NCBI GenBank assembly: GCA_904063045.1
Contig: CAJFCJ010000002.1
Coordinates: 1,116,001-1,180,000 of the forward strand
Length of the DNA: 64,000 bases
DNA from: Dimorphilus gyrociliatus
Taxonomy: Eukaryota; Animalia; Annelida
Reading direction: 5' to 3'
Position numbers and translations under genes: made by a program. Shown piece by piece: positions 336 to 38,105 of the stretch. The notes under the pieces were generated by a model. It saw only the letters and a program-made list of their open reading frames with translations, did no database searches and was not told the origin of the DNA. How positions within the stretch are numbered: position 1 is the first letter of the stretch; each line of letters starts with the position of its first letter.

Positions 336-4734
<4,399 letters not shown>

Positions 4735-4946
4735 ATATGTGACTGAATATATTCTGCAAAACACTTGCTTCGCATTCTTACAAAGATCATGTTGAGAGTA
4801 AACGTAAGCCACTTTCAAGTTGTATTTACTGCGAGGTCTCTAGACATAACATATATTTATATATAATTTAAATGAGATTATTTCATATCTATTTACTTAT
4901 AATAGATATAACTATTTTTCATGGATAAAATACATTGCGGCAGTTT

Positions 4947-7122
4947 TCAAGTGCTGTATTTAGCAACGTTGAGCGCCGTAGCTATTTTAAGTGCAGGACC
5001 CAACTTCAAGCCCATCCTTTCCACAAAATCTTCTTGCTTGGCAAGTAAGAAAGATTCGCCATCGATTTCTTCTTCTTTAAACTTCCTGCCGTATTCGTGG
5101 CAACCTGGCAAACTTCTCACAAACTCTGATACTTCGTCAATAGACCATTTTTCAATTTCGTCCGAATTAGCAATAGACGCGCATGACAAAACTTTTCGCT
5201 GATACTTAACCGACGTGACTATTGCCAAAGGTTCCGCTTTATGTATCGGCTTTCTGCCCCTCTTTCTAGAAGTTGTCGAAGTTTCTTTCTGAGCTGCTGC
5301 CAAAGGGCACCCCGAAACCTTATGATGGAATGGATACTTTCCTGTTACGTGACCCGAACTATCACAACCGGGCGTTGGACACTTTTTGCTCTCGTTAACT
5401 CTAGTCTCTGCAGTGTTCAACGACTTTAGACGATCAGGAACAAATTCTTTGCTCAAATTATTGAAATTATATGGACATCCGAAGACGCTGTGATGTGTTT
5501 GATGTGATGCTCCTTTAACGTGACCTACACCTGTGCAACCAGGGGTAGGACATCCAGACGTTTGAATATTAGGCAATTTGCTGTCCATGGGATCTAAAGG
5601 TGCCTGTAAACTATGGCCAGTTTTTGCACACCACCCACAAGGGTGTAAATCGGTGCTATCATCGTCAACCCAATTATCAAGATAATCGGGCCAACCATCA
5701 TAATGAATCAAAAGACGATTTGATTCGGTTTTCACAATCGTCGCAACGCGAATTAACGACGGATTTCTTACGTCAACCGCTTCTAGTTTCGTATCTGCTT
5801 CAAAGTTACTAATAGAGCGATTACGAAAAGCTCTACCGGGAATGCGTTTGCTGTTCGTATGTTCTAAATATTTCTCCCAAGTAAATGTCTTAATATTCGT
5901 CCAGCTTGGTGGTGGGGATAGAGCTTTCGCATTTGCTTGGCACCAACCCACTTGATGAACATACGGGGATGATAGGTCACACCAATAATCATAATCTTCT
6001 TCCCAACCATCAAAATGTATAAGCACCTTATCGGCAACAATGTCTGCTATAGTTGCCACACACGTAAGCACCGTATTCTTCTTATCAACAGCTTCTAGCT
6101 TCATCCCCACTTCAACGAACGGAGGAACAGCATTATAGTTTTGCGTGTTTGAAATTATGAATAGAGACTTCTGAGCTTGTTTACTATCAGGGATTTTTGA
6201 CCAATCGAAATCATTTTGATTGGGGGGTAATTGCAGCTTTTTTCCGTTTTTGCTGCACCAACCAGGGGGAAAGATAAATGTCGAATCAGCATTCACCCAA
6301 AAGTCATAGGCATTAGAATATCCTTCAAAATTTAGTCTCAATCTATATCCCTGAATTTGAACGATATTTAAAACGCAATAAAGAGAAGGATGTCTCGGGT
6401 CGATTCCTTCTAGCATTGTTTGAACTTTGAAGTGATTCTTCTTTGTGTGGTAGGGCTTGAGAAAGCAGGAGTTTGGAGCAGCCATACTACTAGTTTTTTC
6501 TAGATACGAGTTCCACGGAAAGAATTTCCCCTTCTGTCTCATGATTGCTGCAATGCGAGAGTTGCGTGAAAAGATAAACATCTTCTGTTAAGATGGTCTA
6601 CTTACGCTCTTGAGGTGATACGGTAGCTTCCTCCACTGTTCCGAGCTTCCGCCTCTTCTTATCAGGCGGTAGAGCTCCCTTCTCATGACTAATTAAAATG
6701 TAGTTAGAAGCGCTGACCGAATTGTTTCTCTAATAAGCGATTGTTATAGAAAACGAAGCGCGCATGCTAACTTTTTTTAAGCTTTTAAATACTAAGATAA
6801 ATATCATATATGGGCGATTCTCTTCTAGAAAGCAAAAAGTGCAGCATAATAAATACATACTTTGTCGTTTTAAGCTTTCCCTTTTCTCTTTTGGATTTGG
6901 AATCTTGAGAACCGCTTGATGATTCATCGATTTCCAAACAGCCGAGCTCATTATATCGAAACTGAAATTCGAATAAACGACTAAAAAAAACAAATAAAAA
7001 CTCTAAATGTTTATACAACTTTTAGTTCTGTTAACGGCAAGCTACCGACTTCCCCCTCCCACACTAAAGGGTCATCGTGTTCGTTAGTTTCTTCGTCCGT
7101 TCTTCCGTCGGACGAAGTATTA

Positions 7123-7154
<32 letters not shown>

Positions 7155-7580
7155 GTTCATGAGCGATTCTCGATCATTATTAAGAGTTCCGCCATCTTGC
7201 TTGTCTTTTTCGAGCTTTATGGAGATTTTAGGAACTACTTTCGATTCCGATTCACTGTCAAACGACGTAACCAGCTCAGGTGAGGCATCTTAAAAAATTA
7301 AGAATTTATCAATGTGAGTCTTGTCAAAAAAGACAGATCTAACGATCGTTTTATCGAAAGAACATTATTCTAAAAATAAAATTATTTCTAAACGATTATT
7401 ATTTTTTCTATAATTACCTGTCTGAGATGCTAATCCGGAAGGACTATTGTCGCATGGGGAGATGCAAACTTCGTCTGTTAATTAATAATAAAAAGTTACT
7501 TTATGATAGTCAATTGTTTATTTAGCAAAATTACCTTTTTGCGTCCCTTCGTTAACTTGTACCAACGTTTTTTCTTCCAT
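4947..7580 (-). CDS. L3MBTL: Lethal(3)malignant brain tumor-like protein (3 MBT repeats, 2 C2HC zinc fingers, SAM)
   Basis: In-frame spliced model from ATG 7580 (MEEKTLVQ..). Contains [12 protein letters not shown]|[11 protein letters not shown], like the L3MBTL N-terminal motif. Three MBT repeats (GMKLEAVD; [12 protein letters not shown] aromatic cage), two CPTPGC..GH..H...GCP fingers and a C-terminal SAM ([26 protein letters not shown]). Confidence 0.93.
7119..7157 (-). repeat. Coding (AAT/AAC)13 poly-Asn tract in L3MBTL
   Basis: 13 consecutive Asn codons directly after an ATG codon (7158-7160) within an in-frame L3MBTL exon. Confidence 0.9.
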
Positions 7581-34769: not shown

Positions 34770-37700
34770 ATGAACCGATACCAGATTATGAAACAGTTGA
34801 GTTTGCCTTATTTCTTTAGTTCTATTTGTAAATAGTTGTACTTTCATTTACGAATTAGGCTAGGTGATGGGACCTACGGGAGCGTCCTTTCGGCCAAATC
34901 AATTGAAAGCGGAGAAACAGTTGCCATAAAGAAGTAAGTAAATATTTAGTTTTTTTAAGTACTATATCACTTCCAAGACTCTGCGTTGAAATTTAATGCC
35001 TTGTTACGACTGAGGAATTATATAAAAGTTGGTCATCGACACTGCTATTAGTTTGAAATTTATTTTTGTAGCTTTTTACTAGACCATTTAACAAATATAA
35101 AAATGTATCTGTGAACTCATAGGATGAAGAAAAAATACTACTCTTGGGATGAATGTCTAGCACTAAGGGAAGTAAAGGTAAATTGATTATTTTCTAAATA
35201 TGTCAATGATTACTATGCGTATATAGATTTTTTTTTCTTCTTCGTTTACAAACGTTATTGTTAATTTAATGGTTAAATATTTTACTCTTTGTTTACTTTT
35301 TAAATAGTCTCTACGCAAATTAAGTCATGCGAATATAGTCAAATTAAAGGAGGTGATAAGAGAGCATGACTTTCTCTACTTTGTTTTCGAATTTATGAAG
35401 GAAAACCTCTATCAATTGATGAAGGATAGGTAATTTACTATTTTAAATTGAATTATTAATCATATACTTTAAAGCTAATGAAAAGAAACATAGTAAGATT
35501 TAAATTATAAATAGCTATATATTGATCATTTTATGTTCTTTGTGACTATTATTCTAATTAACATTGGTAGGTTAAATCTTTTCTTTTTCAACTTTAGGGA
35601 TCGTTTATTTCCTGAATCAACTGTGCGTAATATATGCTATCAAGTATTTCAAGGCCTAGCTTTTATGCATAAGAATGGTAAGATAGATTTTATTCTAATT
35701 TCGTTTTTAATTCTTACCAATTTAAGATATCTTATTTCACTACTACATGTTATTGATACGAATTTTATGAGGCATTTCTCTATCGTAAGTTAACACACAC
35801 ACACACACACACACACACAAAGAAAATGTTGCAAGAATCTCCTCAAATTGACAAGATGGCGGTAATTACATCGTTAAGATATACTGATTTTAATTTAGGT
35901 AGAGAAACGCCTTGTATTGATTATGTTTCATTAAGATGGTCAAGGCTATTTAATTTTAGATCGGCGAGTCTTTCGGATGAGTGGAACGTATATTTAATCA
36001 AATATTATTTTACTCTTCCTTTGTTAATATTTCTTATACTCTTGTATAAATGAAAAGTTACTATGGAGACAAAGTAATGAAAAAGCTATATTCTTTAGGC
36101 TACTTTCATCGAGACTTGAAGCCGGAAAACTTGTTGTGTAACGGGCCTGATATGGTAAAAATAGCTGATTTTGGATTGGCGAGAGAAACAAGATCGGCAC
36201 CACCTTACACTGATTACGTTTCAACGCGATGGTCAGTATTCAATGGGATTTTTTTTTAAAAAGAAAGAATTGAATGTTATTTCTATTTTATTGCTTAAAA
36301 AAAAAGCACAATCCTTTTTATCAAAATGTTGAACGATTTAGCGATTTTTTTTATTGTTTTCATTCACTTGACTCACAATATATTTTGAAAGTAAAGGATG
36401 TTAATTTTTCTCCTATTTTCAATAGGTATCGGGCTCCAGAAGTATTACTGAGGTCCACTTCATACAATTCGCCTATCGACATTTGGGCTATGGGGACCAT
36501 TATGGCAGAATTATATACCCTTCGACCTCTTTATCCAGGAAATAGTGAAATAGATCAAATGTTCAAAGTTTGTTCAATTCAAGGCACCCCAACAAAGGTA
36601 GTAAGTAAAAACGATGATACGTTTCATTAATTTCAATTAATTTTATAGGAAGACTGGCCTGAAGGCTACCAATTAGCATCTGCTATGAATTACAGATGGC
36701 CACAAATGGTTGCAACAAATTTTAAGCAAATCGTACCTAGTGCAAGTAGTGAAGGTTTAGATCTCTTGAGAAGGACTTTAATGTGGGATCCCAAAAAGCG
36801 TCCTCAAGCTGTCCAGTGTTTAAGACACGGATTCTTTACTGTTGGCAATAATCTTAATAATTCTCAAAAGCTTAATAGGCCACAACAGCAGAATACGGTA
36901 ACGAAGCCAATATCAGTGGTTAAAGAGCCTGCCTTACCATCTTTAGGCAATTCAAATGCTACCAGAAAACCTCTACAGGAAAAAGATCCTCTAAATATTG
37001 TTACCGCAAAAAAATCTGCTCAAAAACGAATAGGAGGAGGCATGTCTAGCGATTGGGATGACATGGATGATTTAGGATTATCTATGTCCTTACCAAGAAA
37101 GAACAGTCATATGGCAGCACCTGCACGTAGACCTAGTATAGGCTATAATAAACCGACCCCCTTAGCGGCAAAACACTTTGATGATATGGATGACTTTGAG
37201 GATATTCTCAACTCTCTCGGAAATCCAGCACCCAAGCCGCCTACTCAAACTCGTCAAGATTCTGGCCGACGACTTTCCGCCTCTCAGCGCTATCAAAAGA
37301 TGGCGCGGTACAAACCAGGTATGGCTTATCTAGAATATTTCAACCCTTATTTTCCTATCACATATTGAGCATGAACAATTTGTTTTGCACATTCACTCTA
37401 TCGTGCCACTCACGCAGGTCACAATCGAGTATCTAGCGGTCGTCGAAAAGATCGAGATAGTCCCTTATCAGGCCTTTTATCACCTCTGCCTGGAATCAAT
37501 AACAGGGGTAACGGCCAACGGCATTCAATATTTGGTAGGTTTTATTCTAAATCACATGTTCACTTGACTTTCTCACATTTGTGAATTACGAGATAAAATT
37601 CCAGACAAAGAATGAATCATTCTTTTGTTTGACTAACAGGACCGTCGTCTTACGGAAATGCTGCTGCTAACAAAAACTCGACATATATCCCATCTTTTGC

Positions 37701-38105
37701 TGACAATTCGAAGGGAACAACAGGTTAGACAATGGTTTTTTTAAAAATTTCTTTTATACCATGACCCTGTACCTGGGACTAAACAGAGTAATAAAATACC
37801 GGTGTGATACAGGTTTCAGGGCCATGGGGCTTCGCCCAACACAAGCTGCAGCACCTATTTCCACGTTAAAGCAGACATCAGCTAATAAGCAGCCTGTAAA
37901 CGTTGCTGGTAGAACGGATTGGACTGCAAAGTAAGCTTTATTAATGTGTATAACATCCTCAATATATTTTCTTCTCTATATCTCACATTTCGCACTTCAT
38001 GGTGCAATAAATAAAAAAACAATGTATTTTTCTCCATTAACATCTAATTTACGATCATCTAATCTTGTTTTCTTTCCTCTTTTATCTTCTAGGTACCTCA
38101 AATAG
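34770..38105 (+). CDS. MAK: MAK/ICK (CILK1) ciliary RCK-family Ser/Thr kinase
   Basis: MNRYQIMKQ|[13 protein letters not shown]|[19 protein letters not shown]; [20 protein letters not shown] activation motif ([11 protein letters not shown]|YRAPE); C-terminal GRTDWTAK|YLK-stop. Confidence 0.95.
35772..35938 (+). other. Degenerate tandem copy of the MAK catalytic/activation-loop exon (pseudoexon or mutually exclusive exon)
   Basis: An open frame reads ..FLYRKL(TH)n..[20 protein letters not shown]|gtcaag, versus the real exon [31 protein letters not shown]|gtcagt. Same 3' donor position and phase. Confidence 0.7.
35793..35819. repeat. (AC)n microsatellite
   Basis: About 13 AC units inside the degenerate MAK exon copy. 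Confidence 0.95.

What the first reader, a model, noticed from the sequence alone, without database searches (positions are those of the whole stretch)
35772..36231. Decayed duplicate of the MAK/ICK activation-loop exon, phased to be mutually exclusive with the real one
Seen: inside the long MAK intron (35678-36098) an open frame ends [20 protein letters not shown]|GT. This mirrors the real exon's [24 protein letters not shown]|GT, with shared DNA blocks (ctgatttt, agagaaac, tgatta.gtttca, gatggtca). Further upstream, FLYRKL resembles YFHRDL but is broken by an (AC)n insertion. A good acceptor (ctgattttaatttag, 35898) defines a 40-nt exon (35899-35938) starting in phase 1 and ending in phase 2, exactly like the 133-nt real exon, so including both would frameshift. 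Established: tandem exon duplication is the usual origin of mutually exclusive exons, and TDY phosphorylation activates MAK/ICK. Inference: splicing of the 40-nt exon would give an in-frame isoform lacking HRD and DFG with TDY changed to IDY, i.e. a kinase-dead isoform of a ciliary-length kinase. Alternatively it is a dead pseudoexon; its donor (gtcaag) is weaker. A perfect YY1-type CAAGATGGCGG (35852-35862) also lies inside the copy.
Basis: partly seen in the sequence, partly recalled or inferred. Interest (0 to 1): 0.75.

Follow-up and report, generated by a model that had tools for sequence, protein, structure and literature searches.

The report
Dead duplicate of a kinase exon
An intron of the cilium-length kinase gene MAK/ICK in the tiny worm Dimorphilus gyrociliatus holds a real but decayed second copy of its key catalytic exon. 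The copy looks like a fossil, not a working alternative exon, while lamp shells and moss animals keep two intact copies of the same exon.

Summary
Window 35772-35938 is a decayed tandem copy of the 133-nt HRD-DFG-TDY exon (36099-36231) of the D. gyrociliatus MAK/ICK gene. This gene is DgyrCDS1171, and the window's exons match it 100%.

The window alone gives modest support: tblastn E 4e-4, ahead of all non-kinase hits. A syntenic contig from an unnamed close relative settles it. Its orthologous intron carries the same copy, less damaged, alignable over 128 of the real exon's 133 nt (E 2e-7).

The functional reading is not supported:
- Between the two species the real exon differs by 9 synonymous and 0 nonsynonymous codon changes.
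- The copy differs by 1 synonymous and 15 nonsynonymous changes plus a 12-nt indel.
- The copy's identity (0.70-0.75) matches the intron baseline (0.65-0.68).
- The proposed acceptor AG is absent in the relative, and so is the YY1-like motif.
- The annotated protein uses only the real exon.

No dinophilid transcripts were reachable, so the junctions remain untested.

Best reading: a pseudoexon whose decay began before the two species split.

Side finding: Lingula anatina, Bugula neritina and Watersipora subatra each hold two intact 133-nt copies of this exon with canonical splice sites. These are probable mutually exclusive exons, and my paper search found no description of them.

The parts
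35598..35677 (+). MAK/ICK exon 5 (..FMHKN, ends in phase 1), donor G|GTAAGA
   Evidence: Read. Pfam Pkinase positions 94-117. Matches annotated protein P0151.
35678..36098 (+). Intron 5, 421 nt, the longest intron of the gene. It holds the decayed exon copy.
   Evidence: The species' median intron is 66 bp (PMC7854359).
35772..35938 (+). Decayed tandem copy of the 133-nt exon, now 167 nt. The ancestral acceptor AG is kept at 35770-35771 and the donor-equivalent GTCAAG lies at 35939-35944.
   Evidence: The orthologous copy in the relative is at about L002:5065-5200.
35793..35819 (+). (AC)13 microsatellite inserted in the 5' half of the copy. It is absent from the relative's copy.
35852..35862 (+). 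CAAGATGGCGG, a YY1-like or start-codon-context word, lying in the stretch of the copy that corresponds to the exon's PDMVK codons.
   Evidence: It occurs 64 times in the genome against 11 for the reversed control. It is not conserved in the relative.
35877..35938 (+). Better-kept 3' half of the copy. DFG has become DFN and TDY has become IDY. It lacks 12 nt (RSAP) that the relative's copy still has.
35899..35938 (+). The AG is followed directly by GT.
   Evidence: The arithmetic is confirmed. The acceptor is absent in the relative.
36099..36231 (+). Real exon 6, 133 nt, running from HRD through DFG and TDY to STRW
   Evidence: Pfam Pkinase E 3.9e-12. 100% identical to P0151 residues 123-165. 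93% nt identity to the relative with no amino-acid change.
36426..36600 (+). Exon 7 (YRAPE..GTPTKV)

Best explanation
The segment is a pseudoexon, the remnant of a tandem duplication of the 133-nt catalytic-loop and activation-loop exon of the Dimorphilus gyrociliatus MAK/ICK (CILK1, DYF-5 type) kinase gene.

Shown:
- The duplication covered the whole exon together with its acceptor and donor.
- It happened before D. gyrociliatus split from a sequenced close relative.
- The copy had already changed the activating Thr of TDY to Ile by that split.
- Since then each species' copy has drifted at the intronic rate. The window's copy gained an (AC)13 insertion and a 12-nt deletion. The relative's copy gained an 8-nt insertion, its original acceptor AG became AT, and DFG became ELC.

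Inferred:
- The copy is removed as part of intron 5 and contributes nothing to the protein.
- Its matching end phase is inherited from the parent exon.
- The AG that would make a 40-nt exon is a chance, species-specific substitution.
- Because other phyla keep intact pairs of this exon, the copy may once have been a working mutually exclusive partner that was later lost.
For: - Duplication: in the window; in the relative (E 2e-7 over exon positions 6-133).
- Synteny of L002, with an acyltransferase upstream and UTP20 downstream.
- Single locus in the own genome.
- Predates the species split: six shared derived sites in both copies, including ACT to ATT in TDY, against 8 and 9 lineage-specific sites.
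- No coding constraint: 15 nonsynonymous and 1 synonymous differences in 21 aligned codons, plus a 12-nt indel. The real exon shows 0 and 9 of 43.
- Differences between copy and real exon are spread evenly over codon positions: 6, 7 and 8.
- Conservation of the copy is 0.70-0.75. Neighbouring intron is 0.65-0.68 and the real exon 0.93.
- The acceptor and the YY1-like word are not conserved.
- Read from the ancestral acceptor, the copy meets a stop after five codons (sequence).
- The annotated protein CAD5111910.1 uses only the real exon.
Against: - No RNA data for this species or its relative could be reached, so rare use of the AG at 35898 or the GT at 35939 is not excluded.
- The acceptor looks as good as real acceptors of this gene, and the real exon's own donor also has C at +3.
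- An 84-codon open frame runs through the copy. My rough estimate is about a 6% chance for an intron of this size and composition.
- Only one relative was available.
Confidence: 0.85

Rival explanations
1. In D. gyrociliatus the 40-nt segment 35899-35938 is spliced in place of the real exon. This gives an in-frame isoform that lacks HRD and DFG, a kinase-dead form.
For: - The AG at 35897-98 follows a T-rich tract and a CTGAT branch-like site.
- 40 and 133 both leave remainder 1 when divided by 3.
- The frame is open through the segment.
Against: - The acceptor is absent in the relative, there is a 12-nt indel, and within the segment 6 of 11 codons differ nonsynonymously.
- The donor GTCAAG lacks both the +3 purine and the +5 G.
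- It would require skipping a strongly conserved constitutive exon with good splice sites.
- The annotated model lacks it.
Confidence: 0.04
2. Poison exon. The 40-nt segment, or the 167-nt copy read from its ancestral acceptor, is sometimes included ahead of the real exon. That shifts the frame and sends the transcript to nonsense-mediated decay, which would tune MAK/ICK levels.
For: Both candidate acceptors (35771 and 35898) and a GT donor are present. Inclusion would give a premature stop (sequence).
Against: Neither acceptor is conserved, because the relative has AT and AC at those two sites. Conservation is not raised above the intron background, as regulated poison exons usually show.
Confidence: 0.05
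3. The copy now serves as non-coding intronic function. It could be an enhancer or YY1-type site, or an AG|GT recursive-splice point (35897-35900) that helps remove an intron long for this genome.
For: - CAAGATGGCGG is about six times commoner in the genome than its reversed control.
- AG|GTAGAG resembles a juxtaposed 3'/5' splice site.
- The paper reports ATAC peaks in unusually long introns (PMC7854359).
Against: Neither the motif nor the AG|GT is present in the relative, although its intron is twice as long. The intron's length is explained by the duplication itself.
Confidence: 0.05
4. Chance resemblance, with no duplication.
Against: - The protein-level hit stands clear of noise.
- The hit is collinear, on the same strand and in the adjacent intron.
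- The relative's copy matches nearly the whole exon at E 2e-7, including the 12 nt that the window's copy lost.
Confidence: 0.01

Closest known systems
Tandem exon duplications and their unannotated or decayed copies in introns (Ivanov & Pervouchine 2022, PMC9013439; Martinez-Gomez et al. 2022, PMC9741552)
   Same: An exon and its flanks were duplicated in tandem within one gene. The copy is on the same strand and keeps the same 3' boundary and phase. This is the recognised origin of mutually exclusive exons.
   Different: Here one partner has lost its reading frame, its catalytic residues and all coding constraint. It is a relic, not an alternative exon.
Intact tandem pairs of this same 133-nt MAK/ICK exon in Lingula anatina, Bugula neritina and Watersipora subatra
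   Same: The same exon with the same boundaries, length and phase. The extra copy lies a few hundred nt upstream. Including both copies would shift the frame.
   Different: In those species both copies keep AG/GT and all the HRD, DFG or DLG, and TDY residues. In the two bryozoans each copy is nearer its counterpart in the other species than its neighbour. In Dimorphilus the upstream copy is dead. Whether one duplication or several gave rise to these is unresolved.
Mutually exclusive kinase-domain exons of MAP kinases (JNK exon 6a/6b, p38-alpha). This is from my own knowledge and was not checked here.
   Same: Tandem-duplicated exons inside a CMGC kinase domain.
   Different: Those pairs are both functional and change substrate-docking regions. 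They do not include the HRD/DFG/activation-loop segment.
Poison exons and pseudoexons
   Same: An intronic segment with splice-site-like ends whose inclusion would cause a premature stop.
   Different: Regulated poison exons are typically highly conserved. This segment is conserved only at the intron background level.

Membership tests
MAK/ICK (CILK1, DYF-5; RCK-type CMGC kinases), for the host gene | Protein kinase domain with HRD, DFG and a TDY activation-loop motif | tested here: met
   Pfam Pkinase matches on exons 5-8. [11 protein letters not shown] and TDY are read in 36099-36231.
MAK/ICK (CILK1, DYF-5; RCK-type CMGC kinases), for the host gene | Best full-length relatives are named ICK, MAK or dyf-5 | tested here: met
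   P0151 (D. gyrociliatus CAD5111910.1, 100% to the window's exons) hits ICK-like, MAK-like and dyf-5-like proteins at E 1e-173 to 1e-147.
Tandem exon duplication | Significant similarity between an exon and a segment of the adjacent intron, on the same strand and collinear | tested here: met
   E 4.4e-4; relative, E 2e-7 over 128 of the real exon's 133 nt.
Tandem exon duplication | Copy shares the exon boundaries and phase of the parent exon | tested here: met
   AG|GC at 35770-73 matches 36097-100. TG|GTCA at 35937-42 matches 36230-35.
Mutually exclusive exon pair | Both exons are intact and frame-compatible, and including both together breaks the frame | tested here: not met
   The full copy (167 nt) has a stop after five codons, and DFG and TDY are mutated. 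Only an ad hoc 40-nt sub-segment keeps the frame.
Mutually exclusive exon pair | Both exons and their splice sites are conserved under purifying selection in relatives | tested here: not met
   15 nonsynonymous and 1 synonymous differences, a 12-nt indel and no acceptor in the relative. Identity equals the intron baseline.
Mutually exclusive exon pair | Transcripts exist that contain one exon or the other | not testable with these tools
   No dinophilid transcript was in the protein collections. The annotated model uses the real exon only.
Poison (NMD) exon | Inclusion junctions are observed and conservation is raised | tested here: inconclusive
   Conservation is not raised. Junctions could not be tested.

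The most novel reading that the evidence does not exclude
The dead copy is what remains of an old lophotrochozoan pair of mutually exclusive exons. That pair would give the ciliary kinase MAK/ICK two alternative segments carrying both the catalytic loop and the activation loop. It would survive intact in brachiopods and bryozoans and have been lost without trace or decayed in annelids and molluscs. D. gyrociliatus would then show the loss in progress. The alternative is that this one exon was duplicated independently three times.
Probability: 0.3. Interest if true: 0.55.

Novelty: new member of a known kind. Interest (0 to 1): 0.35.

Why it matters
For Dimorphilus itself the result is modest. 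It is a clean, datable example of a duplicated exon decaying inside an intron of a compact genome, and it explains why this intron is six times the species' median length. It also removes a tempting but unsupported kinase-dead isoform from the record.

The wider point came from the comparison. The exon that carries the catalytic loop, the DFG motif and the TDY activation site of a conserved cilium-length kinase is present as two intact, selectively maintained copies in a brachiopod and two bryozoans. If they are spliced alternatively, those animals make two MAK/ICK enzymes that differ in the heart of the active site. RNA-seq could test this directly.

Tried and rejected
- Permissive Smith-Waterman scoring gave a noisy null. 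Two of 836 natural windows reached the observed score, so I did not rest the duplication claim on it.
- The four-way MAFFT alignment misplaced the window's copy around its indels. I used an anchored manual alignment instead.
- Transcript evidence was sought three ways: an exon-8 word search, a full HMMER scan of representatives, and a search with the annotated protein P0151. No dinophilid mRNA-derived protein turned up. All the relative's contigs contain introns, so they are genomic.
- Look-ups of P0072 and P0179 (Tubulanus) found no record.
- Maximum-likelihood trees of the 133-nt exons could not decide between one duplication and several.
- Pfam finds nothing in the copy's open frame.
Exons were searched one by one by reference, and the database's own annotated protein (P0151) stood in for the spliced product.
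- P0006 looks like a vertebrate ICK. It was displayed once and listed with the other hits in two local scripts, and it was neither searched nor looked up.
- The third big protein search was left unused.

Full report
**What the window is.** The window is G000:C2:1116001-1180000 of a 77.9-Mb assembly. The translations of exon 6 and exon 8 are 100% identical to CAD5111910.1, DgyrCDS1171 of Dimorphilus gyrociliatus. It is an annelid, not human, and no contig here was taken for human.

**The gene.** It lies on the + strand. From the sequence and from P0151, the exons are:
- 34770-34795
- 34859-34933
- 35123-35177
- 35308-35429
- 35598-35677
- 36099-36231
- 36426-36600
- 36649-37318
- about four small exons reaching a stop near 38105

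Pfam finds the protein kinase domain on the single exons. The full annotated protein's best relatives are named ICK-like, MAK-like or dyf-5-like. Exons were searched one at a time by reference, and the database's own protein P0151 served as the spliced product.

**The observation.**
- The real exon is 133 nt, with entry phase 1 and donor TG|GTCAGT.
- In the 421-nt intron upstream, an AG|GC at 35770-73 mirrors the real acceptor.
- A frame-broken 5' half follows, interrupted by (AC)13 at 35793-35819.
- The 3' half (35877-35938) translates to [21 protein letters not shown] and ends TG|GTCAAG.
- Shared 8-mers sit at offsets of 281, 281 and 293 nt.

*Statistics within the window.*
- The exon peptide was searched against the window with the real exon masked. 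It finds two genuine kinase genes and then the copy, at 27.3 bits and E 4.4e-4. The next hit has 17.3 bits.
- The DNA-level test is weaker. With permissive gaps, 4 of 5000 shuffled introns and 8 of 5000 shuffled exons reach the observed score, as do 2 of 836 natural windows.
- The own genome has no other copy of the region, so this is not a dispersed repeat.

**The relative.** A word search with exon 8 returned one protein, P0001, at 89% identity. It is encoded on Logan genomic contigs of six SRA runs, one of them 53 kb long. That contig, L002, is syntenic: an acyltransferase lies upstream and UTP20 lies downstream on the other strand. Exons align at about 93% and introns at about 65-68%.

Its orthologous intron is about 800 nt and contains the same copy in a different state of decay.
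- It has no AC repeat.
- It keeps the 12 nt that the window's copy lacks.
- It has an 8-nt insertion.
- Its first acceptor reads AT.
- Its DFG reads ELC and its TDY reads IDC.
- It aligns to that species' real exon over positions 6-133 (62.5% identity, E 2e-7).

This settles the duplication and shows that it covered the whole exon.

**Age.** In the 3' half both copies share six derived sites relative to both real exons, including ACT to ATT, which turns the activating Thr into Ile. There are 8 and 9 lineage-specific sites. Jukes-Cantor distances are 0.39 between the two copies and 0.39-0.47 between copy and real exon. The decay therefore began well before the two species split, roughly as long before as since. 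That last estimate is my inference.

**Is the copy under selection?** No.
- Between the species the real exon has 9 synonymous and 0 nonsynonymous codon differences in 43 codons.
- The copy has 1 synonymous and 15 nonsynonymous differences in 21 aligned codons, plus the 12-nt indel.
- Differences between copy and real exon fall evenly on the three codon positions (6, 7, 8).
- Identity of the proposed 40-nt exon is 0.75 and of the 3' half 0.70. The intron on either side gives 0.68 and 0.65, and the real exon 0.93.
- A sliding-window profile shows no peak over the copy.
- The acceptor that defines the 40-nt exon (TTTAG|G) reads TTAAC|T in the relative.
- By my count, the two AG-defined segments I checked upstream of that species' donor have lengths 62 and 39, and neither preserves the frame.
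- The donor GTCAAG lacks the +5 G that the real donor and the relative's copy (GTCAGT) have.
- Read from its ancestral acceptor, the window's copy meets a stop after five codons.

The equal end phase is inherited from the parent exon. The entry phase of the new AG is a one-in-three coincidence.

**The YY1-like word.** CAAGATGGCGG is present. It is mildly enriched in the genome, at 64 copies against 11 for the reversed control. The word also reads as a start-codon context (AAG ATG GCG). Here it lies in the stretch of the copy that corresponds to the exon's PDMVK codons, and it is not conserved in the relative.

**Transcripts.** No dinophilid transcript-derived protein was found by the word search, the full HMMER scan or the search with P0151. 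The published annotation, which used RNA-seq (PMC7854359), has only the real exon.

**Wider comparison.** To see whether this exon is ever duplicated elsewhere, I fetched the orthologous loci of nine other species.

| Copies | Species | Coordinates or source |
|---|---|---|
| Two intact | Bugula neritina | L007:6054-6186 and 6533-6665 |
| Two intact | Watersipora subatra | L010:3132-3264 and 3533-3665 |
| Two intact | Lingula anatina | L014:4095-4227 and 4735-4867 |
| One | Owenia, Capitella, Paralvinella, Octopus | |

Blastn of each single-copy species' own exon against its own locus found no decayed copy.

In the three two-copy species each copy is exactly 133 nt, has AG and GT, and keeps all catalytic residues. 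In the bryozoans the upstream copies are 79% identical to each other and the downstream copies 82%, with identical peptides. Upstream against downstream gives only 67-74%. Both copies are therefore old and under purifying selection. One gene model uses the upstream copy (Bugula, P0003). Two use the downstream copy (Watersipora, P0174, and Lingula X1, P0167). Including both copies would shift the frame, so these are probable mutually exclusive exons.

A search of the held papers for MAK, CILK1 and mutually exclusive splicing found nothing. Trees of the 133-nt exons are unresolved on whether this reflects one duplication or several.

**Verdict.** The finding is a real, decayed tandem exon duplicate, a known kind of object. 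The proposed kinase-dead isoform is not supported by the comparative evidence. The most interesting by-product is the pair of intact duplicates in two other phyla.

Noticed in passing
L007:6054-6186 and 6533-6665 (Bugula neritina); L010:3132-3264 and 3533-3665 (Watersipora subatra); L014:4095-4227 and 4735-4867 (Lingula anatina): Each MAK/ICK orthologue has two intact tandem 133-nt copies of the HRD-DFG-TDY exon with canonical AG/GT. In the bryozoans each copy is closer to its counterpart in the other species than to its neighbour, and the downstream peptides are identical. These are probable mutually exclusive exons in the catalytic core. I found no paper on them.
   Followed up: partly
window 34770-34795 and 38093-38105: The annotated protein starts MEAHELPDYIR from an upstream exon and ends ..TDWTAK. 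A 26-nt exon encoding MNRYQIMKQ would restore the N-terminus that the orthologues retrieved here share. A last micro-exon giving ..AKYLK would restore the C-terminus seen in Bugula and several unnamed hits. The model may be an alternative form or slightly mis-annotated.
   Followed up: no
window 36044-36098: The last 55 nt or so of intron 5, just upstream of the real acceptor, are 73-87% identical to the relative, against about 65% for the rest of the intron. This may be a branch-site or splicing-control region.
   Followed up: no
window 7189-7199 (-) and 35852-35862 (+): CAAGATGGCGG occurs twice in the window and 64 times in the genome, against 11 for the reversed control. It may be a promoter or start-codon-context word in this species.
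   Followed up: partly
window 35897-35900: The candidate acceptor is followed at once by GT (TTTAG|GTAGAG), the layout of a recursive splice site. It is not conserved in the relative.
   Followed up: partly
L014:4735-4867, L011:6792-6924, P0009: The exon used in the Lingula model (and in unnamed P0009) reads DLG, and the Owenia exon reads DMG, in place of DFG in otherwise intact MAK/ICK orthologues.
   Followed up: no
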